Positions 1-64,000 of a DNA stretch of 64,000 nt are shown piece by piece (position 1 is the stretch's first letter; each line of letters starts with the position of its first letter). A program made the translations under genes and the position numbers. The notes under the pieces were generated by a model, which saw nothing but the letters and a program-made list of their open reading frames with translations, did not search any database and had not been told where the DNA came from. Source of the stretch: Trichosphaerium sp. ATCC 40318 (Eukaryota; Protista; Tubulinea). The stretch lies in NCBI GenBank assembly GCA_038496445.1, contig JALMLS010000039.1, positions 55,096 through 119,095 of the forward strand, written 5' to 3'.

Positions 1-759
1 ATGCTCCATGGTAGCAGAGTACCAGTAAGTTCTCCATTAAATGACCAAACTAAAAAAAAATTCCTCTAAAAAAGGTTGTAACGAAAATCGAAGATGGCTT
101 GTACTTGGGTGGATTTCCAGCTTTCTGGAGGTTTACAGACTACCCAAAGAAATCACCTTATAGCGCTATAGTAGATATGACTTGTGAGGTACGATTGTAG
201 GCGTGTTTTTGTCCAAACTGGTTACAATTGAGTTTTAATAAAACTTGAATAGATTCCTCAACAATACAAGTGGCGACATTACATCAACGTACCACTTTGG
301 GATGGTACAGCACCTACTCCAATACAAGTACAAACATGCGTTGATTGGATAACAAAGCAAAGAAATGCAGATAGAGGTGTTCTAGTGCATTGTGGGTTTG
401 GTATTGGAAGGAGTTCAACAATAGTCATTGCGTATTTAATTTCAAACGGTAATACTATTTGTCACGTGTTACAAGCATATAATCCATACTTTGGTTTTTT
501 CTTTTTTCCTATTTTCTCAAGTAGCACGGAGTTGTTGTTCGTGAAAGGGTTGACATGACTCTGTTGCTCAATCGTTTTTTTCATTGAGACTTTTTTACAA
601 TTTTTTGTTTTTCTCGTCTGTTAGTACTCACTTTGTGGTTTAGGTTCTTTTGAGACAATTGATGAGGCATATATGTATCTAAAATCAAAAAGATCTATTG
701 TTCATATAAACACTAGTTATCGCAAAGCACTTCAGTTGTGGCTAGATAATAATAAATAA
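1..759 (+). CDS. Dual-specificity protein phosphatase, spliced; 5' end may lie outside the window
   Basis: Exons at about 74-188, 253-448 and 643-759 join to give ...IEDGLYLGGFP...IVDMTCE|IPQQ...PLWDGTAP...VLVHCGFGIGRSSTIVIAYL..., with the HCx5R catalytic motif; TAA at 757-759. Confidence 0.88.
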
Positions 760-1320
760 TAAAAACTAATATATTCTCACTATTCAAAACAAATGTACAC
801 AATAACGAAAGAAACAACGTTTCTAGCAAGGCCTACTAGAGACACTGTAGCAACCATAGTTTTTCTTATATTGTTAATCTTTACAAGTGAAAGTGTTTAT
901 TTTCTTTGAACATAGTTTGTACACCATTTTCTTGATTGATCAGCTCTTCCGAAGATATAAATAGTACAAGAGAATCTATTTATATAATTTTAAAGTGTCC
1001 GTGTCCATTGCATGAGAAACACCATTTGAGCCGTTATATGATGTCACGTTTGACTACTTATCATCGAACTTACAGCAACCTAAAGAAAGACAACGTGACA
1101 TAAAAAAATTGTAATAAAACGACTTAGACATTAATTCTATCTACGTTTACCAACACAACAACTTTGATTTATGTTACAGCAACGCAATATAAGGACACTA
1201 ATCTTGTATTTAACTTTCCTTATTAATAAGAAAAGGCAAGCTACACACATAAAGGCTAATGGTATTGAGAAGATGTAACCAATTTTATTCTAAACTAAAC
1301 TACATATGATTCTTGCAAAG

Positions 1321-1663
1321 TCATCCATTAATATACGCTTTCACAGCTTCAATAAACTCAACACTGTCCAAACGTAGGCTCTTAGTACGTTCTCGTGCAT
1401 AGAACGAACAATCCACCCTGCTGCCCTCCTGTCGCAATGTGTTTTGTACAAACTCACCTGCGGACTTCCAACGAGCTTCGTTCTTTGCTTTAAAGGTATA
1501 GCATGGACTTGTATTATTCTTGGTGATTGTCACCCAACTAAAAGGAAATAAGTGGTTTGTGGTGGCGAAATAAAAGCGCAGAGAAGGCGTACTTGTTTAT
1601 AGCTTTACGCACACTCTGTGTATCACGGGGATTGTGGTTTTTATATGGCTTAAGTAGCACCAT
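1321..1663 (-). CDS. Small two-exon hypothetical protein (about 95 aa)
   Basis: ATG at 1663; a GTACGC donor near 1591 and a TTTTAG acceptor at 1538 join MVLLKPYKNHNPRDTQSVRKAIN to WVTITKNN...KAYING* in frame. No recognisable domain. Confidence 0.4.
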
Positions 1664-5240: not shown

Positions 5241-5631
5241 ATCTTTATTTCACCACGATGCGCATTAAGCCACGCTGTTGGAGCCGCTCAGTGATTCTGT
5301 CTTGTTAAAAGCTCAAAATCATTTTCAGTAAGCATCTCTGGCAACATATCTCCACTAATCACAGTTAGATTATACTCATAAGGTAATCTAATCTTCCACT
5401 GTGTAAGTGGAATATATACTTGAGTGCAACTACATTTTGTGTAAGAAGTCATGTTATCAGCTTTGAAAATTAGTCCTAAAGCAATGGAGATAATAGTAAG
5501 TTTTTCTTACTGATTAATAGAACTTTATTAGAGCAACAACTACTTACATATTGCACATGACGTGAAATAATTTTGCTGCATGTTTCCAAGCTAATTAATT
5601 TTGCACCTGCCACTGCCTATTACTACAACCG

Positions 5632-6456: not shown

Positions 6457-6815
6457 TGTATGATCAATGTCAATTTTCGTCAAATAATCGTACTAAATAG
6501 CGTACAAGTGTTGCGAGCACAAGTATACTGCGAGAAAAGTTAATTTATTATCTAAAAAAGGTGGCTTAATGCGTGGTCTACCTTAATCTCATGAATTTAC
6601 AAACGTAAAGTTGTTATTTTGGTATCAAGTTCATTGGAGTTATTAAGGACTTCATGTCACGCAGTGACGTAATGGAACATCTTCTCAATGTTGTTTGTTT
6701 TAATCAATTTCTACACTCGTAAACTTAAAAATCCACAAAAAAAAAACAAGAAAAGCAAAAGTGGATATTGATTGGGAAAGCAAGTTTTTACTTTTATTTT
6801 GAATTACTGTTATAT

Positions 6816-9983
<3,168 letters not shown>

Positions 9984-10411
9984 TGTTGCTTACAAAGTGA
10001 GAGGAATGGATAACGTAAAAGGGCGAGAGAAAGCAATGGTTTGGCGGTGAAATTGCCTTAATCAACATGGCTTAAAACGCTGACTGAGAAAAGCCGCAAA
10101 CGCTGTTCTATAACCTGTACAATATCTACGCCGCGTACAAATACTATTTTAGTGATAAAACTCAATTGTCACAATTTTACAACGCTAAACTCGCAAGCAG
10201 TACCCTCAAGCGTGTTTTAGGGTCCAGATATACATCAATATACCGTTTATTCACTGCGACCTTTTTTAATGTGCTTTCCACCTTTTATGAGCGTCAAAAC
10301 CACTCCAACAGTTATTTTACCGTTTTAATAAACCTATATTGTGAATGTGTTCCCATATTTTCGATTCACAGCCCAAACGATACAACGCAAGCCAAATACA
10401 GCAAGGTAACG

Positions 10412-13400
10412 ATGGGTAATAAGAGTTTAAACTCCCGTACGTACTTATAAGGCGTAACAAAGCGCGTTCGTGACTCTGTTGTAGAATTACGTAAGAAGAA
10501 ATGGAGAGAAAGGGAGGAGGTTAACCTAAGGAAACATAAGATATCTGTACGAGTTTTCTGAGAGTTTTTGAGAGTTTTTTTAGGCTTTAGTCTATATTTC
10601 AATTTAATCACGTGATATATTGAAGCGTTGTTAACATTGTTTGATGTGTAGGAAATACCACCTTCTGTCTCTGATTTAAAGGCAAAGAAGGTCATGCTTG
10701 CTGAGAATGATATTACAGAGGTAAAAAAACGAATCACTTTGAGCGTTGTTTGGTTTATTTGTTTGGTTGATTTTTCTTTTTTTTCTTTTTCATTTTTTTG
10801 GTAATTTTTGAACTTATTATTATTAGCTTCCAAGTGAGCTTTGTGCTATGAAGAATTTAGAATACTTGGAGTTAAGGTTCGTTGATGTTTTTATTTATTA
10901 ATAACTTGGTTGTTCTCTTTTTTTTAATTACGTCAAACAGTTCAAATCGGTTGGGAACATTACCACCAGCTCTAGGTACGAACATTAAAACTTTAGCTGT
11001 AAAAAACTTGAAACGCTGAGAATAAGAAAATCCGGCGCTAATACTTCTTGTTTTTATTGTTCTTCGTCTATTATTATCAGTGTTTTGTCACGTGATATTT
11101 TTTTCTCGCGATAATCGTGTTAGGAATTACTTTTTCCCTTTTGTTTTTTTCATGTTTTCCTCACGTGTTATTGACATTGTCACGTTTTTTTTCAAACTTA
11201 TTACGTCTTTAGGTCGTATGCAGAAACTAAAGGAGTTGTATTTGGATAACAACAAGCTATTTTTAAATCCCCTATCACCTGGTACGCGAAAGCTTTTTTG
11301 AAAACAACTGGATTTTTTTAAAAGTCGCTTTACGTCCACTCTCAAACGTTGTTGTTACGTTTATATGAGTAAAAAATTTATGAGTGTATCACGTGTATGT
11401 TATTAACGTTTAAACCAAGCGCTTGGGCAATTGGCACAACTTACAGTATTGGTTTTGAGGAAAAATCAGCTTGATGATATTCCAATGGAATTATCTCATT
11501 GTGCACGCTTGACGTGAGTATTTAGTCTACCCCTAAGGTGTTAATTAACTTCTATATTTCACAGGTTATTGGATGTATCTGAAAATAACTTAAAGGTACC
11601 TTTTTACAATCAACAAAACCGCAAGCTTTTTAGCTGATTTTTTTTCTTCAAAGTCATTTCCACCGGAGATTTGCGAATTGAAGCAATTACAAACCCTAAA
11701 GATTGAGAAGAACAACTTACAGGTATGTTTTTCTTGACTTATTATAAGACTTCTTGAGAGGATGTATGGCTAACAATTTGAATTACAGGCACTCCCAGAG
11801 AAGTTAGGAAATTTGGCTTCTTTGACTGAAATGTCATTTTACGAGAATCAAATTCGTAAAATTCCTGACTCCATAGGGGATCTTAAGAAGCTTTGTAAAG
11901 TGAATTTCGGCAGGAATAAGTTACAAGAACTACCAGAGAGTTTTAAAACACTAAGAACATTAACACACGTGCGTTTCAAATTACATCAATTCCAAATTTT
12001 TCTTAATTTTTTTTTGTTATTTAGTTTTACATTGGTGATAATGGTGCTTTGGATGTACGTTGTTTTTAATCATTAGTATCAATTATTCTGATTTGTATTT
12101 TATAGACTTTACCAGAATTCACGTGCTTTCCGTCACTACGATACCTGAACATCCAAGGTCTTAACGTAAGTTGTTTTTATACATTAATACTAGAGAGAGT
12201 GTTTTACTTTTTTTTTCGAAAACTCTTTATTGCGCTCTACTAGTTTTAGTAATATTTTTTTTAGATTTCACGTATCGATCCATCTATTGGAACATTGAAA
12301 AACCTTGAAAAACTCGAAATGCGTACGTTGTAGCAAGAATGTCTTCCTTGTATCTTTTTTTGAACCTGCAAAAATTTTTTGCTCACGTGTTCTAGGCGCA
12401 AACCACCAGATTCAAAGCTTGCCACCGCATATTGGTGATTGTTTACAACTCCAAGAACTTGTACTTATATTTAACACGTTATATTTGTATTTATTAAGGT
12501 ATCTATAGGACCTGTTTGGATGTAGGTTTACAGCTATTCCAAAAGAGATTGGTAAATTGGTTAAAATGAAGGTATTAATTTTTTTCGATCTTCTGTGTTT
12601 TCTCGTGCTTACAAGGCTTTCTTATAGGTTCTTAATCTTAATGGAAATAAGCTTACTACTGTAACCTTCCCTGCCGCTGTTGGAAACATGAATCAGCTGG
12701 TAAGATAGTTGAGTATCGTTAAATCATTTCTCATATTTTTTTCAAAAATAGGTACATCTTAACCTGGGAAACAACAAGGTTCGTAACGCACTCTCAAGTA
12801 TTATCTTTTGATATTTTAACCTTTAATAGCTCAGTACGCTTCCACGTGAAATCAGAGGTTTGGTAACTTTAGAGATACTTGATGTTAGTATCAACGAACT
12901 GACTGATCTTCCTGAAGAGGTACGTTGTTTTTTTTTTTTTCAGATAAAGTTGTTAAACGTTTTGTAAGATTGGCAAAATGTGCAAGCTTCAAAGGTTCTA
13001 TTTGAACGGAAATCAATTGAAAAAGAGTACTAAACATATCATCAAGAGTATCTGAGTAAAATAACTGGTTTTGTAGTACCTGAATCGATTGGAGAATTGA
13101 CAGAACTGAAGATTCTTGATTTGAAACAGAACGAGATTTCTGTTCTTCCAGAGAGCCTTGGCCTCCTTAAACAAGTCACCAAGTTTGACTTTTCGAATAA
13201 TATGCTAACAAAGCTTCCATGGTAAGTTTGTTGACAAGATTGATCAACTCAACTATTGATGGGAGAGTTATGAAGGCTTTTTGTTGACATTTGTTGGCTT
13301 TTTTTGCTAATTCGAATCTTTAGGTCATTGCACTACTTACACCGTAATTTGAAGATTTTAGAGGTTTCTCATAACCCTCTAATCGTTCCACCACAGCCAG

Positions 13401-13724
13401 GTACTTATATTTTAGTCACATGATACCGAACTGAAGTGAAAAAAAAACCCAATCTTTTTCCTTTACAATAACGAATGATTGACGTCCTTTTTCTTTAGTT
13501 GTAAATCGTGGTCTATCACCTATACTTGGTACGTTCACTTTAATATTATATTCATAACAAAACTTGTATGTTAAATTATTGTACTCATTGTGTTCTATTT
13601 AGAGTGGCTAAGAAACCATGAACGAGAGGTAATTTTTTTTTCTTTATCACGTGTTTTTTTTTCTTACTCGTTGTTTTAGGGAAGAGATGCTTCTATTGTT
13701 GGTCTTGGATTACGAGACAACTAA
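10412..13724 (+). CDS. lrrA: Leucine-rich repeat protein, ortholog of Dictyostelium LrrA (about 20 introns)
   Basis: MGNKSLNS..., canonical LxxLxLxxNxLxxLP repeats, NNKLFLNPLSP, NQLDDIPMELSHC, NMLTKLPW and C-terminal HNPLIVPPQPVVNRGLSPILEWLRNHEREGRDASIVGLGL match my recollection of LrrA along its length. Confidence 0.85.
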
Positions 13725-13946: not shown

Positions 13947-14753
13947 TCACTGTGTTTTGTTTTTTTTAATTTGGTTTGCAAGAAGCTCTTTGTTTACAAT
14001 TGTATCACGTAATTCTTTGTTATAAGGTTCTCCATTCTCGAACCATATTTTGACATCACTCTTCTTTCCATCAACGTATGTAACTTGTAACTTTATTTTC
14101 CCATTATCATGCCACTCCTTGTGCTCACCAACCTCATTTCCATCAACGTACATTGCTTGTAACTCAAGTTGTCCGTTCTCATACCACATCTTTACTTCAC
14201 CATTATTTTTTCCACGAACAAACACAGATTGTGCTTTAATTTGTCCATTCCTATGCCACTCCTTGACATCACCATGTTTCCTACCAGCAGTATACATAGC
14301 AGAGAACTTGATTTGACCATTCTCATACCATCCTTTTGCCTCACCATGTCGCTTACCAACAATGAACATATCTTGAAACTTGAGTACACCAGTCTCATAC
14401 CATGCCTTGTACTCGTCATACAATTTACCTCGAAAATACAAAGCCTTTGCCCTGATCTGACCATTCTTATACCAACCCTTATACTCACCACTCTTCTTGC
14501 CATTATCATAGACAGTTTTGCTTTTTAAACTGCCGTCATTGTACCAAAGAATCCAAACACCTTTTTTTTTGAGATAATCATCATAATGAGTGTTAATAGC
14601 AGCTTTTTTTGAAAGCACGTGGAACTTTACAAATGTTTCCTTGTTGAAACTACATAGATACTTTTGGAGTTCGTTTGGAAGTCGTAGAATGTAACAAATC
14701 TTGGCACAAGGGTATGTTTGTACCAAGGTTGGTTCTTTTTGTACTTTTCGCAT
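13947..14753 (-). CDS. F-box-like + MORN-variant (MORN_2/YwqK-like) repeat protein, intronless
   Basis: CYILRLPNELQKYLC N-terminal motif, then about 7-8 24-aa repeats of type GExKxWYENGQIKxxxxYxxGK. Confidence 0.85.
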   Translation of the reverse strand: MRKVQKEPTLVQTYPCAKICYILRLPNELQKYLCSFNKETFVKFHVLSKKAAINTHYDDYLKKKGVWILWYNDGSLKSKTVYDNGKKSGEYKGWYKNGQIRAKALYFRGKLYDEYKAWYETGVLKFQDMFIVGKRHGEAKGWYENGQIKFSAMYTAGRKHGDVKEWHRNGQIKAQSVFVRGKNNGEVKMWYENGQLELQAMYVDGNEVGEHKEWHDNGKIKLQVTYVDGKKSDVKIWFENGEPYNKELRDTIVNKELLANQIKKNKTQ

Positions 14754-18081: not shown

Positions 18082-18085
18082 TTAA

Positions 18086-27128: not shown

Positions 27129-27882
27129 TTAAAGAATGATACAACATCTTGATCTGCGCGTTTTTACGGGCTTAATAATACGCATAGATAAAGGCCTAGG
27201 AGGTAACTTTGGTGTTGCTTCTCTGACTTCAATGTGTGGATACTCGTTAAGTGTTACAGGTGGCTCTGTTGATCGTCCAGTATAAGGTAATAAAGGTACA
27301 CTATGAAAATAGTTTAAGTTTCTTCATGAATTATGATAAGAAAACAAAGTAGTTGGCTTGAAATCTCCTTGATCGCATCACGTGATTTTTAGAAAAATTA
27401 AATAAACAATCACGTGATATATTCTCAAAAGTGCAGGGATAATTTTTTTGATACGGTTTAATGTCTCTGTGATGCTGGTGTAGGCGTACAAGTCACTTGG
27501 TGTATCTTTATGATTATTTCTTGTACTTTCGGTTGTTTTGAGCTCTACACAAGTAATTATTGGCGTCACAACGTAAAACAGGATTATTTTAGTATATTTA
27601 CCTATAGTTTCTTCTTCAGAGTCCATTATGGCGGACATTGTTAGCGATGCAAACGAGCAAGCGAGTAACGTAGTAGAACTTGGAGGGTTAATTTATCAAA
27701 GATACAATTTCACAAATATCATGGCTTATCGCGATGTTAAGCTCGATAAAAACACGTGACGAGCTGAGTTTTTTTTTCTTTCTTAGGGATTACCTATTAG
27801 AATGTCAGTGTTTTTGATTATCGCGGACGTTAACAAAACAAATGCTTCTTCAACTAAAACAAAAGAAGAACATTAACAGAAG
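27129..27882 (-). pseudogene. 5'-truncated spliced gene ending in a CaaX motif
   Basis: Last exon VPLLPYTGRSTEPPVTLNEYPHIEVREATPKLPPRPLSMRIIKPVKTRRSRCCIIL*; upstream exon-like pieces (EEAFVLLTSAIIKNTDILI) abut the duplication breakpoint at 27883. Confidence 0.5.
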
Positions 27883-28484
27883 TACAAGTATATTCATTGT
27901 GTTGGTATGCTTGTATGGTAGTAAATGTCAATAAAACAGAACGGACAAAAAGGGCGTTAAGTCAGAAACCGGAATAACAAAAAGCCCTTATTTCAGCGTG
28001 GACATAATAGTCACGTGTGGAACACAATTTTTTGGAATAAATCACGTGAGAGTGCACACAAATTAGTTGGTGACAGAATCGATTTCGAGAGGTCCATTGC
28101 CCACAAGCTTCAAGTGTTCAACAGTCACGTATTCGGGCACTCATACCTGCTCACGTGTTTGAGAAGACGCGACTCGAGAAATTACATGTAATTTCGTAAT
28201 TGACTACAATAGATAAAAATCCAGCAGCTAGCTAGTAAATCAAAATGCAGTGTATTACAATGTTGTTTGCAGAATTGAGAAGTTTGGAAGTTGTTTTATT
28301 TTTTGTACACGTGGAAAGACACCTAACTAGTTTTGTTCCCTTCAGTGTTATAAAATACAATCCCGGTCCTCATTTCAGCAACTTTTGGTAAGGTAACAGT
28401 TGTACATGTTCATGCTGGAGTTGAATAAGGATTATCAATAAAAGTGATAAATGTCTCGATTTTGAGCTTGTTTATCACAGTTTA

Positions 28485-29891
28485 TTAGGTGAAACGTATT
28501 TTATGTGCACCTGTCAACGTTTTAATATCTGGTAGCTCTACATTTTTGCGGTAATCCAACCTGATGGTATGTACACCTGAAATTGCCTTTAAACCTGCAC
28601 GTGTTACATTTGTATATGATAAATCAATCTTATGCACACCTGCCAATGCGTTCAAACCTTCATCTGTTACTTTTGTATATGATAAATCAATATCATGTAC
28701 ACCTGCCAATGCGTTCAAACCTTCATCTGTTACTTTTGTATATGATAAATCAATATCATGTACACCTGCCAATGCCGCAATGCCATTGTCTGTTATTGAC
28801 TCACAATAACATAGGTTGATAGCGTGCACACCTGCCAATGCCTTCAAACCTTCATCTGTTACTTTTGTATGTGATAAATTAATATCATGTACACCTGCCA
28901 ATGCTGCAATAACATTGTCTGTTATTGCTCTACAATAACATAGGTTGATAGTGTGTACACCTGCCAATGCCGCAATGCCATTGTCTGTTATTGCCTCACA
29001 ACAATATAGGTTGATAGTGTGTACACCTGCCAATGCGTTCAAACCTTCATCTGTTACTTTTGTATCTGATAAATCAATATCATGTACACCTGTCAATGCC
29101 GCAATGCCATTGTCTGTTATTGCCTTACAACAATATAGGTTGATAGTGTGTACACCTGCCAATGCCTTCAAACCTTCATCTGTTACTTTTGTAGATGATA
29201 AATTAATATCATGTACACCTGCCAATGCTGCAATGCCATTGTCTGTTATTGACATACAACCACATAGGTTGATAGTGTGTACACCTGCCAATGCCGCAAT
29301 GCCATTGTCTGTTATTGCCCCACAACAATATAGGTTGATAGTGTGTACACCTGCCAATGCCGCAATGCCATTGTCTGTTATTGCCCCACAACGATATAGG
29401 TTGATAGTGTGTACACCTGCCAATGCCTTCAAACCTTCATCTGTTACATTTGTATATGATAAATCAATATCATGTACACCTGTCAATGCCGCAATGCCAT
29501 TGTCTGTTATTGCCTCACAACAATATAGGTTGATAGTGTGTACACCTGCCAATGCCTTCAAACCTTCATCTGTTACTTTTGTATATGATAAATCAATATC
29601 ATGTACACCTGTCAATGCCGCAATAATGTCGTTTGGTAGCTCACATCGGTTGAGATCAATAGTTGTATTGTGGAGTAATGGACTACCAGAAAGCATCTGA
29701 ACTTCATTTGTGTTTTTAATATGGATACGACCATACCCAACATGGTTATGAACAATATCTCGTAAAAAATGGCACGTTTGGGCTGTACGAAGTGTATATG
29801 TCCCTTGTTTGATAATATGGACTATTAACTCAATTGGTAGCCCAACAAGGTCGAATACTTGGTTGAACTGTGTTTGTTGTTGTTTTTCCAT
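28485..29891 (-). CDS. F-box-like + LRR protein, family copy 3 (15 internal units plus cap), intronless
   Basis: Same N-terminus as copies 1 and 2; unit order A B A B B B A B A B B A B A A then cap; first ATG at 29891. Confidence 0.9.
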   Translation of the reverse strand: MEKQQQTQFNQVFDLVGLPIELIVHIIKQGTYTLRTAQTCHFLRDIVHNHVGYGRIHIKNTNEVQMLSGSPLLHNTTIDLNRCELPNDIIAALTGVHDIDLSYTKVTDEGLKALAGVHTINLYCCEAITDNGIAALTGVHDIDLSYTNVTDEGLKALAGVHTINLYRCGAITDNGIAALAGVHTINLYCCGAITDNGIAALAGVHTINLCGCMSITDNGIAALAGVHDINLSSTKVTDEGLKALAGVHTINLYCCKAITDNGIAALTGVHDIDLSDTKVTDEGLNALAGVHTINLYCCEAITDNGIAALAGVHTINLCYCRAITDNVIAALAGVHDINLSHTKVTDEGLKALAGVHAINLCYCESITDNGIAALAGVHDIDLSYTKVTDEGLNALAGVHDIDLSYTKVTDEGLNALAGVHKIDLSYTNVTRAGLKAISGVHTIRLDYRKNVELPDIKTLTGAHKIRFT

Positions 29892-34159: not shown

Positions 34160-35660
34160 TTGTTAATAGAATAGTACATCCATAAAACGCTGGTGCCATG
34201 ATTTACTGTACTTCTTTTGAAGTACACCATTCATAAAATAGTACTTTGATCTCAATAAACCATTGTCATACCAATGATATGTCTTTCCTTGTAGTCTACC
34301 TTTAACATAAAAACTCTTCTCTTTCAAGTTACCATTTTTATACCACCACTTCTTCTCTCCTTCAAGCTTACTCTTGACAAAATTAGATCGGCTCATTTTG
34401 CTGCCAGAATAATAATAGCATGTTTGAGTTCCTTCTATTCTACCTTTGACATAAGAACACGTGCTCATCAACTGACCATTGAAATACCAAGTCTTTTTCT
34501 CTCCTTCTATTTTACCATTAACGTAATTGCAATGCTCTTTAATTTGACCATTACTGTAGTGACACGTTTTCTCTCCTTCAAGTTTACCATTTACATAGTT
34601 CTTTTCAAACACTTGACCACTCCTGTACCACTGTGTATGTTTACCGTCTCTCATACCGTTGATATAATATCCTTGCTTTGAGAGCTTACCATTCCAATGC
34701 CATTGCGTGTATTTTCCTTCTTTTTTACCATTTACATAGAACGATGTCTCTTTTACTTGTCCATTATAATACCACTGCTCGAGTTTGCCATCAATTTCGC
34801 CATTGGTATAGCGAGTATGTCGATGCAATGAACCATTAATATACCACTTTTTGTACTCGCCTTCTCGCTTATCGTTGACGTAATGACAGTGTTCTTTTAA
34901 GGTCCCATTTCTGTGCCATTTCTTAAACTCTCCTTCTTGCTTTCCGTTGACATAAAAACTCTTCTTTAGCTGGCCGTTCTTGTACCACTTCTTGATCTCG
35001 CCTTGTAGTTTATCATTGACGAAATACCCTTGTTCTCTCAATTGACCACTGTGGTTATACTTCAACCACTTGCCCGTCTTTTTCATATCATAGTTATACC
35101 GTGTTGACATTGCTGCATGTTTTGAAACCAGCGGCCATTTTAAATAGACTTCGGGATCTATATCGCATATATCAAGCTGTATCTCTGGTGGAAGGCTAAG
35201 TAGGTAGCAACCGCGACGAGCACTTGATGGTGATGAGAATACAGATTTACTCTAGTAATAATAGTTAGATGATTGTAAATAGGGATAGTACTGTTACCTT
35301 GGATGACATTGTAGAATGTAGAATTGTTGTTTGTTGTTCGTTTGTTTTATGAAATAATAAATCCACAGTTGCGTTCATGAAAGTGATGCTATGATCGCGT
35401 CGAAATTGCCTCGTGAATATACCAAACGCCAAGCCTTATTCCTGCAATTCTGATAGCAGAAGGTGAGGAAGGTTAAAACGTACTTTGGCTCACATCCATG
35501 TATAATTTTCGGGTGATCTAATTCGGTGATATACTCACGCAGTATTTGTGATATCCTTGAATATTCTGATATTTGTATCACGTGATAATCGAGACTTTAA
35601 GTTAAGGGGATTTATGGTTCACAATACCGGGAAATATTTTTCCCACAACAGTTATTAGCC
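34160..35660. repeat. Inverted duplication arm (partner about 56563-58055)
   Basis: The gene plus about 350 bp of upstream sequence recurs in reverse complement 21 kb away; similarity stops close to the stop codon. Confidence 0.88.
34163..35309 (-). CDS. F-box-like + MORN-variant repeat protein, copy A (4-codon first exon)
   Basis: The ORF extends upstream in frame: MSSK|SKSVFSSPSSARRGCYLLSLPPEIQLDICDIDPEVYLKWPLVSKHAAMSTRY..., then about 12 repeats GExKxWYxNGQL. Confidence 0.85.
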
Positions 35661-51588: not shown

Positions 51589-51661
51589 GTATACACATGT
51601 AAACTGTAAAACATTTGTGTGGAGACTTTGCTCCATCGACATTCAGTTGGTGTTAATTTTT

Positions 51662-56242: not shown

Positions 56243-56900
56243 ATATCTTAAACCCGTTTAACAATATTGACTGTTTTTATATTGATACCACTATAATACA
56301 CCTAACCCAACGTTTTAAATGCGGGTTTGTCTATTAAAAACGCTTTTGAGATTCGTTGAACGAAAAAAAGAACTAGCAGGCTTTAGCCGCGTAAAAACTA
56401 CTCCTCATGTACTGAATAACGGGTGAGACATCACCAGTAACAAAATAGGTTCAAAAGTAATTTGAAAGTTCTGAAGTTTGGCGAACGATTTGATCATTTG
56501 TGTATTTCTATATAAGTCTACAGTGGCGTAAGAGGTTTCTTACTAGTTGCCACGTTGGCTAGCGCTATTAACTGATGGGAAAAAATATTTCCCTGGTTTT
56601 GTGGAACCATAAGTCCCCGTTAATTATAGTCTCGTGTATCACGTGATACAAATATCAGAATATTCAAGGATATTACGAATACTTTGTGAGTTTTAATTAT
56701 CACCTTATCAAGTATAGGCAAAGAATAATGCACCAAAATACGTTTTAACCTTCCTCACGTGTTCCCCGCTCATAATTGAAACCGTGAGACTTGGGGATTT
56801 TGTGTATTCACGTGATCTCATCGCATCACTTTCATGAACGCATTTATTTGTTAATTAATTCATAAAACAACGAATAACACGCCACGTCTCCGATTCTACA

Positions 56901-58052
56901 ATGTCATCAAAGCGGGTACTATTTAATTCTTTCTATTTATAATTGTCTAACTATCATCGCTAGAGTAAATCTGTTCCCTCAATAACATCAAGTGCTCATC
57001 GCGGTTGCTACCTATTTAGCCTTCCGGCAGAGATACAGCTTGATATTTGCGATTTAGATCCCGAAGTCTATTTAAAATGGCCTCTGCTTTCAAAACATGC
57101 AGCAATGTCAACACGGTATAACTATGATATGAAAAAGACGGGCAAGTGGTTGAAGTATAACCACAGTGGTCAATTGAGAGAACAAGGATATTTCGTCAAT
57201 GATAAACTACAAGGCGAGATCAAGAAGTGGTACAAGAACGGTCAACTAAAGAAGAGTTTTTATGTCAACGGAAAGCAAGAAGGAGAGTTTAAGAAATGGC
57301 ACAGAAATGGGACCTTAAAAGAACACTGTCATTACATCAACGATAAGCGAGAAGGAGAGTATAAAAAGTGGTACAGTAACGGTTCATTACACCGACATAC
57401 TCGCTTTGCCAATGGCGAACTTGATGGCAAACTCGAGCAGTGGTATTATAACGGACAAATAGAAGAGACGTGTTTCTTCGTAAAAGGTAAAAAAGAAGGA
57501 GAGTACACACGATGGCATTGGGATGGTAAATTGTCAAGGCAAGGGTATTATATCAACGGTATACGAGATGGTAAACATACAGAGTGGTATAGGAGTGGTC
57601 ACGTGTTTGAAAGGAATTATCATAATGGTAAACTTGAAGGAGAGAAAATATGCTACTACAGTAATGGTCAAATTAAAGAGCATTGCAATTACGTTAATGG
57701 CAAAATAGAAGGAGAGAAAAAGACTTGGTATTTCAATGGTCAGTTGATGAGCACGTGTTCTTATGTCAAAGGTAGAATAGAAGGAACTCAAACATGCTAT
57801 TATTATCACGGTAGAGTAATGAGTCGATCTAATTTTGTCAAGAGTAAGCTTGAAGGAGAGAAGAAGTGGTGGTATGAAAATGGTAACTTGAAAGAAAAGT
57901 GTTTTTACGTTGAAGATAAACTACAAGGAAAGAGATATCTTTGGTATGATAATGGTAAATTGAGATCAAAGTACTATTTTATGAATGGTGTACTTCAAAA
58001 GAAGTATAGTAAATCATGGCACAAGCTTTTTATTGATGTACTGTTCTATTAA
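56901..58052 (+). CDS. F-box-like + MORN-variant repeat protein, copy B
   Basis: MSSKR|SKSVPSITSSAHRGCYLFSLPAEIQLDICDLDPEVYLKW... in frame with the 315-aa ORF; paralog of 34163-35309. Confidence 0.85.
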
Positions 58053-58397: not shown

Positions 58398-59717
58398 TTA
58401 ATCAGTATAAATATAGACACCACGTTCTACAAGGTACACTTCTACACCTATTTTTTTCAAATCATAAATGATATCTTTGTTGACAGTACTACTATGTTTC
58501 AATTCCTTTAAATATGAGAGTGTACACAAGCTCTCACCTTTTACTTTTGAACATGAATCAATATTAAGAATATGAACTCCAACAAGTTCCGCAATACCCA
58601 AGTCTGTAACTTGCTTACAGTCGAAGATGTTGACTGTATGAGCAGAAGCTAGATACTTCAAATGATCATCTGTGATTTTCGTGTGAGACAAGTTAATGTC
58701 ATGCACACCTTGCAATGCCTTTAAACATTCACCTGTAACTTTTGTTGATGCTAGATCAATAGTATGTACACCAGCTAGCGCCTTGATACCATCATCAGTA
58801 ACTGCTGTGTAGTGTAGATCAATCACATGTACGCCAGCCAAAGCTTGAATGCTCTTATCCGTAATTAATACACACTGACCCAAATCAATGGTATGGACAC
58901 CTTTCAATGGTTTCAAATCATCATCTGTGATGTGCTTATGAGGTAATGTGATCGTATGTACGCCTGCCAATGCCTTCAAACCATAGCCTGTAACATTAGT
59001 TCCAAACAAACGGATTTTATGCACACCGCTCAGTAACTTGATTACCTCATGTGTTATATTTTTACACCAAGTTAAGTCTATAGTATGTACACCTTTCAAC
59101 ACGTTTAAACATTCATCAGAAACACTTGTATTAGTTAAATCAATTGTATGAACACCCTTAAGCGCTTTGACGCCTTCGTTTGTTATTCCTTTACAATGTG
59201 CTAGGTTTATAGTATGTACACCTTTCAGTGACTTTAATCCATTGTCTGTAACGTCTGTATTACGTAGATTAATCACGTGTACTCCAGATAATAGTTTGAT
59301 GCCCTTGTCTGTAATTCTTCGACAATCTGACAAATTAATGTTGTTCACGCCTGATAATGCTTTAATACCCCTATCTGTTATTTCAGAACAAAAAAGATTA
59401 ATAGTAAGGACGCCTGAAAGTAAAAGCATGTTGCTGTCAGTAGCATGGACATCAATATTAGATAAAGTTATTGTTGTATTTTGAAGTAGAGGGCTTCCCG
59501 AAAGTCTAGTCAGCTCGCTTTCGTTCATTACGACAATGTTATTGTATCCAACGTGGTTGTGAACAATATCTCGCAATAGATGGCATGTTTGGGCTGTACG
59601 AAGTGTATACCTCCCTTGGTTGAGAATATGCACAATAATCTCAACTGGCAGCGCGATTAGGTCGAAGGTTTGGTGATTTGAACCACTTTCTATCGTTTGC
59701 TGTTCACGTGCGTTCAT
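58398..59717 (-). CDS. F-box-like + LRR protein (divergent family member), intronless
   Basis: FDLIALPVEIIVHILNQGRYTLRTAQTCHLLRDIVHNHVGY...LSGSPLL, then about 14 GVHTIxL repeats. Confidence 0.9.
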   Translation of the reverse strand: MNAREQQTIESGSNHQTFDLIALPVEIIVHILNQGRYTLRTAQTCHLLRDIVHNHVGYNNIVVMNESELTRLSGSPLLQNTTITLSNIDVHATDSNMLLLSGVLTINLFCSEITDRGIKALSGVNNINLSDCRRITDKGIKLLSGVHVINLRNTDVTDNGLKSLKGVHTINLAHCKGITNEGVKALKGVHTIDLTNTSVSDECLNVLKGVHTIDLTWCKNITHEVIKLLSGVHKIRLFGTNVTGYGLKALAGVHTITLPHKHITDDDLKPLKGVHTIDLGQCVLITDKSIQALAGVHVIDLHYTAVTDDGIKALAGVHTIDLASTKVTGECLKALQGVHDINLSHTKITDDHLKYLASAHTVNIFDCKQVTDLGIAELVGVHILNIDSCSKVKGESLCTLSYLKELKHSSTVNKDIIYDLKKIGVEVYLVERGVYIYTD

Positions 59718-60031: not shown

Positions 60032-62090
60032 ATGCAAATCACCTTGGTAACATTCACTATCTTACTTGCTTGTGCTTTGGCACAAGTTTCGAGGCCTGGT
60101 ACCCCAAGAAGCTTCAAAATCAAAGAGTTGGCAGAAACACCTGTCTACAAGACTGGACACGTTGATGCGTATGCCATGATGGAAGAAGATGAGATGAACC
60201 GCGTTTCTGATGTAAAATTACCTTACCGCTTCGGTTACCCTTTCTTCGTTAATATTACAACTGATAACTCAGGTGTATGGCAAGTAGAGAAAGGTAAGTA
60301 ACAATTTCTAACCACTTGAACGTAAAAACACGTAATTTTTTTTTTGTTTGTTCTCTTTTTTTTGCGAACAAGTATCGTCTTTATGTTTATGTCGTTTCGT
60401 GTTATTAAAATTACAAAAGAAAAGTCACCTCCAAAATGAAAAATTTTTAAATCACGTGATTGAATTTTTCCGCTGTTAAACGGACTAACTTTGGTTTTTT
60501 TTTTGTAGCTGGAAAGTACAGACTTTGGCGTCTTGCTATTAAATGTGATCACGCTTATTCAATCAATCTTGTCTTCTCGCGTTATAGACTACCTCCTGGA
60601 GCTAGCTTGTATGTCTACACCCCAGACTTCAAAACAACTCTCGGTGCTTTTACCGAAGACAACAACAAGAACGACTATTTGATGGCAATTCAACCAATAT
60701 CTGGTACAGAGCTCGTCATTGAGGTACGTATTTTTATTGCGCTATTGCTTTATTTTTAAATACGCGTAACACGTGACTGTGATCTATTGTGAACGCTTCC
60801 TTTTTTTGATATTTTTGGTTCGCGTTGTTTTATGGTTAACTTTGTTTTTATAGTACAATGAGTTGATCGACACAGCGTTCAAGGGAGAGATTGCTATCTC
60901 TACTATTGTCCACGCTTACAGACCAGTATTTTCTCAACTCACTAGAGGACCATCTGAGTTCTGTAATATCAACGTTGCTTGCCCAGAAGCCGAGTACGCT
61001 TTTGAGTTTTTAGTATTTTTTTCAGCAAGTTTTTTTTTCTAAACGAAGTTAGCGATTGGCAAGATCAATCACAAGCAGTTGCTTTGATCACCACTGGATC
61101 TGGTAATGCCGTATGTACTGGAAGTATTCTCCACAATACTAAAAAAGATTTCAAACCTCTTTTCCTTACCGCCAACCACTGTTTGGGCAACCCTTCCACA
61201 TGGGTACGTCTTTTGGAAGTTTATAAAAAAATAACGAAAAGTTATTTGATCTTTTGTGCTAACTGTTCTCTTTCAGGTCTACGTATTCAACTACCAATCC
61301 CCAACATGTGATGGTGATATTGGCCAAAAAACTGATTCTATTCAAGGTGGTACACTTCTTGCTAGAGGTGCTGCTTCAGACTTTGCTTTGGTAGAGCTTA
61401 GTGAAGCAATTCCAAAATCATACAATGGTAAACAATCACTAGCGCACTTTTAGATGATTTGTGTTTAATAACCTTTTTAGTCTTTTTTGCCGGTTGGTCT
61501 GCTGTCAATGTACCTGCTGTATCAACTGTTGGTATCTCACACCCATCTGGAGACATCAAGGTAATGATTTCTCGGTTTTTTGCGAATTGAAAAAAGTCAC
61601 GTGACGTAACTTTTTTTGATAAAAATTCACGTGAATAATTACATCTGTTTAACATGTTTAACATGTTTTTTCGTGTTAGTTGTTCGCTAATATTGTTGTG
61701 TTTATTATTAGAAAATCGCTGTAAACAAGGACCGTGTTACTTCTTCTCAATGGTCTGGTCAATACAGGGATACTCATTGGAGAGTAAACTTCTGGGATGA
61801 CGGTACAACTGAGCCTGGTTCATCTGGTTCTGCTCTTTTTGATCAAAATGGACGTGTTGTTGGTCAACTACATGGAGGTGCCGCTTCATGCTACAGAATT
61901 GACTACGATGTATACGGAAAGGCACGTGAAGACAGAAAAATAAAATACAAGGGTCAAATGTTTTTTTGACATTTTGTATTAGATCTCTTATTCATGGGCT
62001 GCTGGTTCCAGCGATGCTGATCGTTTGGATGTATGGTTAGATCCTGAAAATACTGGTACTACTGTATTTGATGGTGAATATCAGCCGTAG
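60032..62090 (+). CDS. Secreted serine protease, lysyl endopeptidase (Achromobacter protease I, S1D)-like, with propeptide; multi-exon
   Basis: Signal peptide; CNINVACP, CTGSIL..LTANHC (His), SDFALVEL (Asp), HPSGDIKKI, TTEPGSSGSALF (Ser), GQLHGG, WLDP; TAG at 62088-62090. Confidence 0.9.
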
Positions 62091-62391
62091 ATGATGACAA
62101 CGATATACTGTACAGAGCTCTTTAAATAAAGCTCTTTTTGTCTTCTTTTTTTGTTAACGTTATAATACCTTCTTATTCCTGTACACCTAAATTCTATACA
62201 CGCGTTGTGTTGCATTACAAGAAAACTGAACAAAAAAACGGTTACCAGTAACAAAACGGTCCGCAAAGATCCTTTGAGTCAAAATGAGTAAGATCCATTT
62301 ATGTTACACAACAGCCTCAACCGGCGCTACGCTCATAGGCATTGTACTACTAAGAAATACACGCCTCAAATCATAAAAAAACAGTTCCCTA

Positions 62392-63281
62392 ATGAGTAAA
62401 GACGAACGGGAAACTATAGAACTTCTAGACATACCGACAGAGATACTGGCGCACTTGCTTGATTTTTTAGACCGCAGTTATAGATTCCCGCTTCTCAAAG
62501 CTGTAAACGATTATCATCCATAATACTACACCACGTGGGATACAAACGAATCTCTGTTAAATCAAGATCAGACTGTTCACGTCTTTCAGGAAGTCCACTA
62601 CTAATAAACACGGAAATATACTTTGGAGATTTCATAGAAGCAACAGACTCAGATCTTTCTCTAATTTCAGGTGTTCGCAGGCTATTCCTTCGTACAAATC
62701 ATGGTATCACCGATAGAGGGTTACACCGTGCTACTGGTGTTCAATCTTTAACACTACAAGATTGTAAACGCATTACAGATTTCGGAATAGGACCACTTGT
62801 TAAAAATCTTAAAACAATTTGTCTGATAGATGTAGGGTATTATCAATTGACGTTACTTTTTCTTACTGGAATACCGAGTATTAGTTTACCATCATCGAAA
62901 ATACTTACAGATGACATACTGCATAAATTAGCTGGTGTACATACAATCGATTTAAGTGGTTGTAAACGCATCTCAGATAAAGGTATCTCATCATTGGCAG
63001 GTGTACATAAAATATACCTATGTAGCACAAACGTGACCGACAAAGGTATATCAGCTCTTGCTGGTGTGCACACTATTGATATATCTTGGTGTTTGGGAGT
63101 AACTGGATCCTGTATGAAAGATATATCAGACGCATATGAAGTTAAATTATCGTATACTAGTGCCAGTGATTATTGGATTGATCAACTTACCGGCGTCAAA
63201 GTATTACAATTACAAAATTGTAATATTACAAACAAGTGTCTAATTGCTTTGGCACAAAGAGGTGTTACAGTATGTAGGTAG
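62392..63281 (+). pseudogene. F-box + LRR gene with a 1-bp frameshift (pseudogene or assembly indel)
   Basis: MSKDERETIELLDIPTEILAHLLDFLDRSYRFP; one missing base at TTCCCG (about 62488) separates it from ASQSCKRLSSIILHHVGYKRI...LSGSPLL and the LRR ORF. Confidence 0.75.
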
Positions 63282-64000
63282 ACTAACACGTGTACAAACT
63301 GTAGTAAACACCCATAAACCAATTTCCTGCATTCCAGAACTTAGCTCTCCCGCTTCGGACGAAGTGGCTACAATACTAACAAAAACAATAAAAATATGAG
63401 AAAGTCCATACTGGAGTTCGAGATCGCGTCATTATTATAACGCGCCATTGACAGTATAAAATCAACCCTGTTTTATAAGTGGTATATATTAACATAACCA
63501 ATAGTCGCAACACAAAAGAAGAAGTAGTGGTTTGTCTCATATTCCCAACGTTCTGAAAGTGAGTTGAATGGAAACATTAAGTAGCAACTACCCAGTATTA
63601 TCAGTGAACAAGCACTGTTAGACACGTCCCAAGTTATTCAGATAAGCCATAAGGCTTTGCTTAGTTGCAGATAACGGCAACTCCTTATCAGTAAGGCCAA
63701 AATCCTGAGCAGAAAATCCGTTGAATTTCGTTACAATATTGTTTTATGTTTGAACTTTTTTTGGTTTTCGAGTTTAGTCTTACAATTTGTTTTAACAATC
63801 CTTTATACAATATAACAAAAAAATAGCTCACACTTGAGCTCAACATGAAAGCACGAAACGGCGAAGAACCCAATTTTGTGGATTTGGTACACTCTAGCAT
63901 GTCTGTCTGCTACAAATTGGGAGTGGCTTTTTAACAAGTAGGGTTAACACTAACTTAGGATAGCATTTCAAGTCAAATCCTCCAGGCAAAACTTTTTTTT

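What the first reader, a model, noticed from the sequence alone, without database searches (positions are those of the whole stretch)
1..64000. CACGTG palindrome is highly iterated and toggles between paralogs
Seen: by eye I count roughly 60-70 CACGTG sites, often as (A)TCACGTG(A/T), many in introns; about 6 would be expected from an approximately 34% GC composition (both figures are rough). Paralog pairs differ at exactly this hexamer: CACATG at 18553 vs CACGTG at 28598 (His/Arg), CACGCG at 19118 vs CACGTG at 28043, CAAGTG (minus strand, about 34610) vs CACGTG at 57600 (Gln/His), and sites at 56756 and 56809 are absent from the 35.4-kb copy. Inference: this looks less like ordinary E-box regulation and more like a mutational or repair-driven motif, comparable to cyanobacterial HIP1, possibly tied to a sequence-specific DNA methyltransferase, or a dense chromatin-organising bHLH site like Cbf1/CDEI. 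The direction of change cannot be polarised from this window.
Basis: partly seen in the sequence, partly recalled or inferred. Interest (0 to 1): 0.8.

Follow-up and report, generated by a model that had tools for sequence, protein, structure and literature searches.

The report
Hyper-abundant CACGTG palindrome across genome
In this intron-rich amoeba-like protist the six-letter palindrome CACGTG occurs 6-10 times more often than chance allows, in introns, gene flanks and coding sequence alike, which looks like a nuclear counterpart of the cyanobacterial "highly iterated palindromes" and most likely marks a very common docking site for a symmetric DNA-binding protein.

Summary
The window holds 73 CACGTG against 7-12.5 expected (order 0-2 Markov; 0 of 100 shuffles reach it). 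It is the top hexamer. The excess belongs to the exact hexamer: all one-off variants, and ACGT or CACGT outside it, sit at expectation. Flanks form a weak symmetric extension, RT-CACGTG-AY. All four paralog toggles are real.

Density is about 2.45/kb in RNA-verified introns, 2.44/kb in 5' flanks and 0.75/kb in verified coding sequence (still 4-6x, all three frames). It is therefore not intron-specific, not a splice signal, not a repeat and not a dipeptide effect. Sites turn over by point substitution; two toggles polarise as gains.

A stationary model rejects a single-path T:G-to-C:G (Vsr-type) drive. It fits a fixation bias from all neighbouring words (S about 2-2.3).

Close pairs lie at 30-32, 53-54 and 73 bp, in helical phase. 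This was noticed post hoc.

Best reading (0.4): a weakly selected docking site for a two-fold-symmetric dsDNA-binding protein of bHLH-Zip or bZIP type. Main rival: a methyltransferase- or repair-linked HIP1-like palindrome.

The scan had already noted this motif in 59 notes on other DNA of this genome. A 23-kb Planoprotostelium control shows no excess. I found no report in the literature.

The parts
8862..8867 (.). CACGTG site. First of a pair 32 bp apart inside one 61-nt intron (8854-8914) of the minus-strand CDC5/CEF1 gene.
   Evidence: The transcript L001 aligns at 100% identity and skips 8854-8914.
8894..8899 (.). CACGTG site. Second of the pair in the same CDC5 intron.
11390..11395 (.). 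CACGTG inside the RNA-verified intron 11282-11419 of a plus-strand gene.
11966..11971 (.). CACGTG straddling an RNA-verified 5' splice site (CAC|GTGCGT). The only verified case of this kind.
   Evidence: (joint 11968/12025).
12120..12125 (.). CACGTG in the RNA-verified exon 12106-12165.
12384..12389 (.). CACGTG in the verified intron 12323-12395, 6 nt before the 3' splice site.
12843..12848 (.). CACGTG in the RNA-verified exon 12830-12919.
13648..13653 (.). CACGTG in the middle of the verified 51-nt intron 13629-13679.
14616..14621 (.). CACGTG inside the MORN-repeat ORF 13947-14753 (minus strand), codon phase 0.
27379..27384 (.). CACGTG site, full form ATCACGTGAT. First of a pair 32 bp apart.
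27411..27416 (.). CACGTG site, full form ATCACGTGAT. Second of the pair.
28012..28017 (.). CACGTG site. First of a pair 31 bp apart in the 3' flank of the F-box/LRR gene. Conserved in the paralog at 19149.
28043..28048 (.). CACGTG site. Second of the pair. The paralog has CACGCG at 19118 (a toggle).
28598..28603 (.). Exonic CACGTG in the F-box/LRR ORF (Arg codon). The paralog at 18553 has CACATG (His). The consensus of the other LRR units (coding-opposite strand) is CATCTG, so this site is inferred to be a gain by T->C.
34458..34463 (.). Exonic CACGTG in the MORN ORF 34163-35110 (minus strand). Shared with the paralog at 57752.
35579..35584 (.). CACGTG 469 bp upstream of the 34-kb MORN gene. 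Shared with the paralog at 56640.
56756..56761 (.). CACGTG upstream of the 57-kb MORN gene. Absent from the paralog. Forms a pair 53 bp apart with 56809.
56809..56814 (.). CACGTG upstream of the 57-kb MORN gene. The paralog has CTCGTG.
57600..57605 (.). Exonic CACGTG (His-Val). The paralog has CAA GTG (Gln-Val). Gln is the MORN repeat consensus (W-Y-x-N-G-Q), so this site is inferred to be a gain that costs a consensus residue.
59274..59279 (.). Exonic CACGTG in the F-box/LRR ORF 58398-59717 (minus strand), phase 0.
61598..61603 (.). CACGTG site. First of a pair 30 bp apart in a predicted intron.
61628..61633 (.). CACGTG site. Second of the pair.
1..64000. The whole window: 73 sites, about one per 877 bp, Poisson-like at large scale.

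Best explanation
CACGTG, in its fuller form RT-CACGTG-AY, is a genome-wide recognition site on double-stranded DNA. A weak but pervasive fixation bias acting on single point substitutions keeps it about 10-fold too frequent. The scaled advantage is roughly S = 2-3 per site. In a protist with a large population, that corresponds to a very small benefit per copy.

The most economical agent is an abundant two-fold-symmetric dimeric DNA-binding protein with E-box/G-box specificity. This would be a bHLH-Zip factor of the Cbf1/USF/TFE type or a G-box bZIP. It would bind throughout gene-dense DNA (5' flanks, introns, and coding sequence where the protein allows) as a general chromatin or transcription organiser, not as a gene-specific switch.

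Individual sites are interchangeable. They appear and disappear quickly, which explains the paralog toggles, while overall density is held.

Shown: the excess, its restriction to the exact hexamer, its presence in all sequence classes and codon phases, the symmetric flanks, substitutional turnover, and the inadequacy of a single-path mutational drive.

For: (1) Excess. 73 sites against 7-12.5 expected. Top hexamer, with 0 of 100 shuffles reaching it. Among composition-matched words the runner-up has 30 and the median is 9.

(2) Only the perfect palindrome is enriched. Eight of the nine one-off word pairs are at 0.54-1.31x. The ninth, CACCTG, is an LRR-repeat artefact. The half-site swap GTGCAC is at 14 against 9-13 expected.

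(3) Flank information is confined to positions -2/-1 and +1/+2. It stays mirror-symmetric when genic sites are oriented by transcription: -1 is T19/A12/G6/C3 against +1 A22/T12/C4/G2, and -2 is A18 against +2 T25. This is expected for a symmetric dimer on duplex DNA, not for an RNA signal. A T flanking CACGTG is, from textbook knowledge, the Cbf1/USF/TFE-type flank.

(4) Density is equal in verified introns (2.45/kb, 5 in 2.04 kb, 0.12-0.41 expected) and in 5' flanks (2.44/kb). It is lower but still 4-6x in verified coding DNA (10 in 13.4 kb, 1.6-2.4 expected), spread over all three codon phases 5/6/4. One DNA-level pressure damped by protein constraint would produce this.

(5) The stationary model with a fixation bias from all neighbours gives 7.4-10x at S = 2-2.3 and leaves the neighbours at 1.0x, as observed.

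(6) Two polarisable toggles are gains, one at the cost of a consensus Gln in a MORN repeat.

(7) All seven gaps of 80 bp or less (30, 31, 32, 32, 53, 54, 73) fall in phase with a 10.5-bp helical repeat. R = 0.86, Monte-Carlo p about 0.001. Four gaps in one 3-bp bin gives p = 0.006. This suggests cooperative binding on one face of the helix.

(8) The feature is genome-wide according to 59 earlier first-reader notes. It is absent from a 23-kb Planoprotostelium control (6 against 5.9-9.1 expected).
Against: - No binding protein, footprint, chromatin or methylation data could be obtained.
- Whether this organism has bHLH-Zip or G-box bZIP proteins was not tested.
- A site every 400 bp of non-coding DNA, and 4-6x enrichment inside coding sequence, is far denser than any known transcription-factor site distribution.
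- Retention between paralogs is only slightly above neutral and not significantly so: 4/7 against 0.36 expected, and 6/9 against 0.53. Per-site constraint is therefore weak.
- One verified bidirectional promoter region (10012-10511) has no site.
- The helical-phase result was noticed post hoc on 7 gaps.
- Composition alone cannot separate selection from a general biased gene conversion.
- Most gene models come from a home-made HMM. Only two genes are RNA-verified.
Confidence: 0.4

Rival explanations
1. HIP1-like palindrome tied to sequence-specific DNA modification. An orphan, possibly bacterium-derived, DNA methyltransferase recognises CACGTG. The motif is then kept abundant because the modified site serves repair, replication or self-marking, or because a modification-guided repair or conversion system favours the intact palindrome in heteroduplexes.
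For: - The distribution matches HIP1: a perfect palindrome found in coding and non-coding DNA, in all frames, spreading by substitution.
- HIP1 is recognised by two orphan methylases and is evolutionarily conserved (abstracts of PMC4390886 and PMC13756078).
- The site contains a CpG. The window shows mild CpG depletion (0.82) with TpG/CpA excess (computed from the counts).
- TET catalytic domains strongly prefer CpGs inside bHLH/bZIP sites (abstract of 10.1101/2021.12.29.474486). This links the hexamer to methylation chemistry.
Against: - No modification data are available.
- The methyltransferase locus could not be reached, and its specificity is unknown.
- Many 'Vsr-like' notes in this genome concern RAP-type repeat proteins.
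- A Vsr-type T:G repair acting on the C/T path alone cannot give the observed pattern.
- A modification-based model does not predict the helically phased pairs.
Confidence: 0.27
2. RNA-level element of short introns. CACGUG would act in the pre-mRNA, either as a splicing enhancer bound by an RNA-binding protein or by self-pairing of two copies into a hairpin that brings splice sites together.
For: - The highest density is in introns (2.45/kb verified).
- Two copies sit 15 nt from the 5' end and 9 nt from the 3' end of a 61-nt intron.
- Pairs can form stems. One of the four pairs is clearly better than shuffles (z = -4.0) and a second is in one orientation only (z = -2.4).
- Other first readers linked the motif to splice signals.
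Against: - 5' flanks are as dense as introns.
- Coding exons are enriched rather than depleted.
- Only about one intron in five carries a site.
- Distances to the splice sites are scattered: 15-186 nt from the 5' site and 6-177 nt from the 3' site.
- Flanks are mirror-symmetric relative to transcription.
- The other folded segments are not better than shuffles: z = -0.5 to -1.2.
Confidence: 0.08
3. Pure mutational drive through very-short-patch-type repair. T:G mismatches in the CA(T/C)GTG context are always repaired to C, as Dcm/Vsr does for CCWGG in E. coli, and this pumps CATGTG into CACGTG.
For: - The polarised toggle at 28598 is a T->C change in exactly this context.
- CATGTG/CACATG is slightly low, 27 against 33-36 expected.
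- There is the unchecked Vsr/C5-methyltransferase note.
Against: - In the stationary hexamer model, a 1000-fold acceleration with the reverse step reduced 100-fold still gives only 4.9x, and it requires CATGTG at 0.01-0.16x. Observed values are 6-7x window-wide and 12x or more in non-coding DNA, with CATGTG at 0.75x.
- The other polarised gain (57600) is an A->C transversion.
- The other toggles involve different positions of the hexamer.
Confidence: 0.03
4. Artefact of composition, of shorter k-mers, or of a dispersed repeat or duplicated genes.
For: - An order-4 Markov model raises the expectation to 41.
- Five sites are shared between paralogs.
Against: - The order-4 figure is circular. CACGT not followed by G, and ACGT outside the hexamer, are at expectation.
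- Removing the paralog duplicates leaves 68 sites.
- Flanks beyond +/-2 carry 0.00-0.03 bits, so there is no repeat family.
- Sites are Poisson-spread over the whole window (CV 1.07).
Confidence: 0.01

Closest known systems
HIP1 (GCGATCGC) and other highly iterated palindromes of cyanobacteria
   Same: A perfect palindrome, many-fold over-represented. It is scattered through coding and non-coding DNA without a repeat-element context and is gained or lost by point substitution. Frequency appears to be held by something other than plain mutation bias.
   Different: Here the word is a hexamer in a eukaryotic nuclear genome with spliceosomal introns, at about 1 per 0.9 kb overall and about 1 per 0.4 kb in non-coding DNA. 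The sequence is the E-box/G-box. Cognate methyltransferases, which are known for HIP1, have not been shown. Paralog retention is near neutral, whereas HIP1 is reported as conserved.
E-box/G-box sites of bHLH-Zip factors (yeast Cbf1 at CDEI and promoters, Pho4, USF, the MITF/TFE 'CLEAR' motif GTCACGTGAC) and of G-box bZIPs
   Same: An identical core, with the T/A flanks (RTCACGTGAY) typical of the Cbf1/USF/TFE class. Symmetric half-sites fit a homodimer. Helically phased pairs fit cooperative or bivalent binding.
   Different: Known E-box factors use promoter- or enhancer-restricted sites at roughly chance genomic frequency. Here the site is 6-10x (12x or more in non-coding DNA) over chance and is also enriched inside coding exons. 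Binding was not tested.
Very-short-patch (Dcm/Vsr) repair bias on oligonucleotide frequencies in E. coli (own knowledge: Bhagwat and McClelland 1992)
   Same: A sequence-specific process around a methylatable C that could raise the frequency of its own target word. One toggle is the predicted T->C change.
   Different: The model shows the single C/T path cannot give the observed excess without wiping out CATGTG/CACATG, which are nearly normal.
Functionally selected over-represented oligomers (Chi, DNA uptake sequences, KOPS) and intron-mediated-enhancement motifs of plants
   Same: Many interchangeable copies, each under very weak selection. Density matters rather than position. Copies lie within transcribed DNA, including introns.
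   Different: Those words are non-palindromic and orientation-skewed. This one is a symmetric palindrome with no possible strand polarity.

Membership tests
Highly iterated palindrome (HIP1-like) | A perfect palindrome over-represented many-fold relative to Markov expectation. | tested here: met
   73 against 7.2-17.5 expected (order 0-3). Top hexamer.
Highly iterated palindrome (HIP1-like) | Present in coding and non-coding DNA, independent of reading frame. | tested here: met
   Verified coding 0.75/kb (4-6x). Codon phases 5/6/4. Introns and 5' flanks about 2.45/kb.
Highly iterated palindrome (HIP1-like) | Copies are not part of a longer repeat and spread by nucleotide substitution. | tested here: met
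   Flank information is 0.00-0.03 bits beyond +/-2. Paralog differences are single substitutions: CACATG, CACGCG, CACTTG, CTCGTG.
Highly iterated palindrome (HIP1-like) | Cognate (orphan) DNA methyltransferase(s) that modify the palindrome. | not testable with these tools
   There is only an unchecked note of a C5-methyltransferase/Vsr-like pair elsewhere in the genome. No modification data.
Highly iterated palindrome (HIP1-like) | Evolutionary conservation of individual copies above neutral expectation. | tested here: inconclusive
   Paralog retention is 4/7 against 0.36 expected and 6/9 against 0.53. Numbers are too small, and no close relative's genome is available.
bHLH-Zip E-box (Cbf1/USF/TFE type) or G-box bZIP binding site | CACGTG core with symmetric half-site flanks (T at -1 / A at +1). 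| tested here: met
   T at -1 or A at +1 in 72 of 146 half-sites against 0.317 background. A at -2 in 73 of 146. Still symmetric when oriented by transcription.
bHLH-Zip E-box (Cbf1/USF/TFE type) or G-box bZIP binding site | Bound by a bHLH or bZIP dimer encoded by the organism. | not testable with these tools
   No such gene lies in the window. The notes search found none. No organism-restricted protein search is available.
bHLH-Zip E-box (Cbf1/USF/TFE type) or G-box bZIP binding site | Sites concentrated in promoters or enhancers, and not elsewhere. | tested here: not met
   5' flanks (2.44/kb) are no denser than introns (2.45/kb). Coding DNA is enriched too. One verified divergent promoter has none.
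Splicing signal / intronic splicing enhancer | Strand-specific, restricted to introns, with a constrained distance to the splice sites. | tested here: not met
   Symmetric flanks, scattered distances, and equal density upstream of genes.
Vsr-type repair-driven word bias | Depletion of the T-containing precursor word in proportion to the gain of the target word. | tested here: not met
   CATGTG/CACATG are at 0.75x. The model needs 0.16x or less, and even then reaches at most 4.9x.

The most novel reading that the evidence does not exclude
A eukaryotic nuclear genome carries a true HIP-type system. A sequence-specific, probably bacterium-derived, C5 DNA methyltransferase marks CACGTG. A modification-guided repair or conversion machinery, of which the noted Vsr-like nuclease could be a part, favours the intact palindrome in heteroduplex DNA. 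The word would then have been driven to hundreds of thousands of copies. This would be the first case of a prokaryote-style 'iterated palindrome plus orphan methylase' architecture shaping introns, flanks and coding sequence of a eukaryote.
Probability: 0.12. Interest if true: 0.9.

Novelty: new variant of a known kind. Interest (0 to 1): 0.66.

Why it matters
If the feature holds genome-wide, as 59 independent first-reader notes suggest, roughly one CACGTG per kilobase is among the strongest oligonucleotide biases described for a eukaryotic nuclear genome. It affects coding sequence at the cost of consensus amino acids.

It offers a tractable eukaryotic counterpart to the unresolved HIP1 problem: what keeps a short palindrome at very high copy number?

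It also makes testable predictions:
- A very abundant symmetric CACGTG-binding protein or a CACGTG-specific modification.
- Footprints or nucleosome-free spots at the sites.
- An excess of high-frequency derived gains in populations.

Practically, the motif is a strong compositional signature. Gene finders and motif-discovery pipelines for this organism must model it, or it will dominate every promoter or intron motif search.

Tried and rejected
- Repeat or transposon origin. Flanks are unrelated and no family is built on the site. Rejected.
- Shorter-k-mer explanation. ACGT and CACGT outside the hexamer are at expectation. Rejected.
- His-Val or other codon-level cause. Exonic sites fall in all three phases. 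Rejected.
- Fixed position in introns or a branch-point role. Distances are scattered. Rejected.
- Self-training of the home-made gene-finding HMM ran away into one giant 'gene'. Only the version trained on RNA-verified introns and Pfam-supported ORFs was used. Class totals from it are approximate. The key numbers were recomputed on verified features only.
- Two attempts at the stationary model with dense or sparse direct solvers timed out. Power iteration worked.
- Outgroup polarisation with relatives. The CDC5 search found no relative above about 63% identity, and only transcript-length contigs. The exact-protein look-up of the MORN ORF found nothing. Two metagenome scans with the F-box/LRR family gave nothing usable.
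- Organism identity. The CDC5 transcript is an MMETSP contig. The best named hits are Arcella (62%) and Planoprotostelium (58%). The mitochondrial G-insertion editing noted by another reader resembles the heterolobosean BB2 (PMC5421314), but identity was not established.
- Literature. No paper links CACGTG to Physarum, to amoebae, or to genome-wide or intron over-representation in a protist.
- RNA hairpins of the paired sites. The result was mixed and mostly not better than shuffles.
Full report
**1. Observation**

An exact search finds 73 CACGTG sites in the 64,000-bp window. Base composition is 36.6% G+C.
- Expected counts are 7.2 (independent bases), 9.9 (order 1), 12.5 (order 2) and 17.5 (order 3).
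- Dinucleotide-preserving shuffles give 9.7 +/- 3.0, with a maximum of 21. None of 100 reaches 73.
- CACGTG has the highest z-score of all hexamers.
- Among the 180 words with the same base composition, the next best (30 and 29) are words that overlap the extended motif. The median is 9.

The order-4 expectation of 41 is circular. CACGT not followed by G (37 per strand) and ACGT outside the hexamer (222 against 216 expected) are at expectation. Eight of the nine one-off word pairs lie between 0.54x and 1.31x of expectation. The ninth, CACCTG/CAGGTG, is carried by the tandem LRR modules. The half-site swap GTGCAC is not enriched: 14 against 9-13. The unit is therefore the exact palindrome.

Flanks add a weak, symmetric extension:
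- T at -1 or A at +1 in 72 of 146 half-sites.
- A at -2 or T at +2 in 73 of 146 half-sites.
- No information beyond that (0.00-0.03 bits).

The motif is thus RT-CACGTG-AY, and it does not sit in a repeat.

**2. Where the sites lie**

Public RNA contigs laid on 10,501-16,500 define a plus-strand gene with at least 23 GT..AG introns of 48-138 nt. An MMETSP transcript that matches the window at 100% identity defines the ten exons of a minus-strand CDC5/CEF1 gene.

On verified features only:

| Class | Length | Sites | Density | Expected | Poisson p |
|---|---|---|---|---|---|
| 27 RNA-verified introns | 2.04 kb | 5 | 2.45/kb | 0.12-0.41 | 7e-5 |
| Verified exons plus Pfam-supported long ORFs | 13.4 kb | 10 | 0.75/kb | 1.6-2.4 | 2e-4 |

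One further site straddles a verified 5' splice site (CAC|GTGCGT). The 500 bp upstream of nine genes hold 11 sites, or 2.44/kb.

A home-made gene-finding HMM, trained on these verified features, gives the same picture for the whole window:

| Class | Length | Sites | Expected |
|---|---|---|---|
| Exons | 22.4 kb | 15 | about 3 |
| Introns | 10.6 kb | 18, plus 7 on predicted boundaries | 1-2 |
| Remainder | 30.9 kb | 33 | 5-7 |

Further points on position:
- Exonic sites fall in all three codon phases (5/6/4).
- Intronic sites lie 15-186 nt from the 5' splice site and 6-177 nt from the 3' splice site, with no preferred position.
- The CDC5 mRNA (2.4 kb) has no site, while one of its 61-nt introns has two.
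- Intronless MORN and F-box/LRR genes carry their sites inside the coding sequence.
- At large scale the sites are Poisson-distributed: gap CV 1.07, and variance/mean of 2-kb bins 1.08.

The motif is therefore not intron-specific. It is equally dense in all non-coding DNA sampled and is damped, but still enriched, where protein sequence constrains it.

**3. DNA-level or RNA-level**

When the 40 genic sites are oriented by the direction of transcription, the flanks remain mirror images, although the transcribed strand is T-rich:
- Position -1 is T19/A12/G6/C3, against A22/T12/C4/G2 at +1.
- Position -2 is A18, against T25 at +2.

Equal density upstream of genes, and enrichment rather than depletion in exons, also argue against a splicing element. 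Two copies can pair as RNA. Of the four pairs spaced 30-32 nt, one folds clearly better than shuffles (z = -4.0). A second does so in one orientation only (z = -2.4). The remaining folds give z = -0.5 to -1.2. I conclude that the signal is read on duplex DNA by something with two-fold symmetry.

**4. Turnover and direction**

Retention between paralogs:
- The MORN pair (84.5% identity) shares 2 sites. One copy has 2 sites and the other 5. Retention is 4/7, against 0.36 expected for a neutral hexamer.
- The F-box/LRR pair (90% identity) shares 3. The copies have 4 and 5 sites. Retention is 6/9, against 0.53 expected.

This is slightly above neutral and not significant. All differences but one or two are single substitutions.

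Two toggles can be polarised with repeat-unit consensus as outgroup:
- At 28598, the other LRR modules read CATCTG, the 18.5-kb copy reads CATGTG and the 28.6-kb copy reads CACGTG. Parsimony makes the last step a T->C gain.
- At 57600, the MORN repeat consensus is W-Y-x-N-G-Q. The 34-kb copy keeps Gln (CAA). The 57-kb copy has His (CAC), which creates the palindrome.

Both are gains, by different kinds of substitution. One replaces a consensus residue.

**5. What kind of process**

I built a stationary model of all 4,096 hexamers under an HKY-type substitution process at the window's composition.
- If only the CATGTG/CACATG -> CACGTG step is accelerated and the reverse suppressed, CACGTG cannot exceed about 4.9x. 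This is the signature of a Dcm/Vsr-type T:G repair, or of a conversion bias limited to that mismatch. Even 4.9x requires the precursor words to fall to 0.01-0.16x.
- Observed values are 6-7x for the window and 12x or more for non-coding DNA, with the precursors at 0.75x. The single-path drive is therefore rejected as the cause.
- A fixation bias toward the palindrome from all eighteen neighbouring words gives e^S enrichment: 7.4x at S = 2.0, 10x at S = 2.3 and 15x at S = 2.7. It leaves the neighbours at 1.00x, which is what is seen.

Such a bias is either selection on each copy or a general conversion bias for the intact palindrome. Selection at S of 2-3 is very weak in a large protist population. 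Composition cannot tell the two apart.

**6. Spacing**

There is no gap shorter than 30 bp. All seven gaps of 80 bp or less are 30, 31, 32, 32, 53, 54 and 73 bp. These are close to 3, 5 and 7 turns of a 10.5-bp helix.
- Resultant length is 0.86.
- Monte-Carlo p is about 0.001 with the period scanned over 10-11 bp.
- Four gaps within one 3-bp bin gives p = 0.006.

The seven pairs are at independent loci. This was noticed after the fact and needs the whole genome to confirm. If real, it points to cooperative binding on one face of the DNA.

**7. Interpretation**

The best-supported reading is a very common docking site for a symmetric dsDNA-binding dimer, kept at high density by weak selection with rapid turnover of individual copies. 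The core and the T/A flanks are those of the Cbf1/USF/TFE class of bHLH-Zip proteins, by textbook knowledge that I did not test here. A G-box bZIP is equally possible.

The density and the enrichment inside coding DNA are unlike any known transcription-factor site distribution. In that respect the motif is closest to the cyanobacterial highly iterated palindrome HIP1, which is recognised by orphan methylases and whose function is still debated (PMC4390886 and PMC13756078, abstracts).

The main rival is therefore a modification-linked palindrome. An earlier, unchecked note of this scan reports a Vsr-like nuclease next to a C5 DNA methyltransferase elsewhere in the genome (s1-372711). I could not reach that locus. 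Many other 'Vsr-like' notes in this genome concern RAP-type repeat proteins.

**8. Context and novelty**

The scan has 59 first-reader notes on the same motif in other windows of this genome, so the feature is genome-wide. Those notes are unchecked and are not independent evidence for the mechanism.

On the organism:
- It is an intron-rich protist whose transcriptome is in MMETSP.
- Its CDC5 is closest to amoebozoan sequences among named hits: Arcella 62% and Planoprotostelium 58%.
- No close relative's genome is available.
- A 23-kb Planoprotostelium locus shows no excess, 6 against 5.9-9.1 expected. The bias is therefore not general to Amoebozoa.

Full-text searches found no report of CACGTG over-representation in such organisms, and none of a highly iterated palindrome in a eukaryote.

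I rate this a new variant of a known kind: an iterated functional palindrome, or E-box, in an unprecedented genomic regime.

Noticed in passing
window 10412-13861 (+): A gene with at least 23 very short GT..AG introns (mode about 51 nt) and micro-exons of about 24-31 nt (e.g. 11565-11595, 12025-12054, 13603-13628). The commonest 5' splice-site hexamer among 27 verified introns is GTACGT (7), ahead of GTAAGT (4).
   Followed up: partly
window 51603-52640: A long array of a 15-nt tandem repeat (at least 49 copies, 60-86% alike), open in several frames on both strands. It sits in the most G-skewed part of the window (GC skew +0.27 at 52-54 kb). It probably encodes a pentapeptide-repeat protein.
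   Followed up: no
window 34163-35659 and 56564-58052: An inverted duplication of a 315-aa MORN-repeat gene with its 5' flank, 87% identical and 21 kb apart. A third, more distant MORN paralog lies at 13947-14753.
   Followed up: partly
window 5563-6691, 18085-19601, 27883-30115, 45524-46843, 58398-59717, 62535-63281: A cluster of F-box/LRR genes built from 63/66/129-nt modules that are shuffled between copies. These modules alone cause the apparent excess of CACCTG, TGTACA, AATGCC and CAATGC in the hexamer table.
   Followed up: partly
window 11472, 11896, 11911, 13132: Single-base differences (mostly C>T) between the window and RNA or other contigs from runs filed under different organism codes. 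Two runs also hold contigs only 90-95% alike. These could be strain variants, alleles or paralogs.
   Followed up: no
window 10012-10500: The CDC5 transcript starts at about 10011 (minus strand). The neighbouring plus-strand transcript already covers 10501. The two genes therefore share a divergent promoter of less than 0.5 kb, one of the few non-coding stretches here without a CACGTG.
   Followed up: partly
L002 (JACCEA010097653.1, 1.4 kb): A short public contig encodes an F-box/LRR protein 62% identical to the window's family at 29.7% G+C. It may come from a related organism. It has no CACGTG, but is too short to be informative.
   Followed up: no
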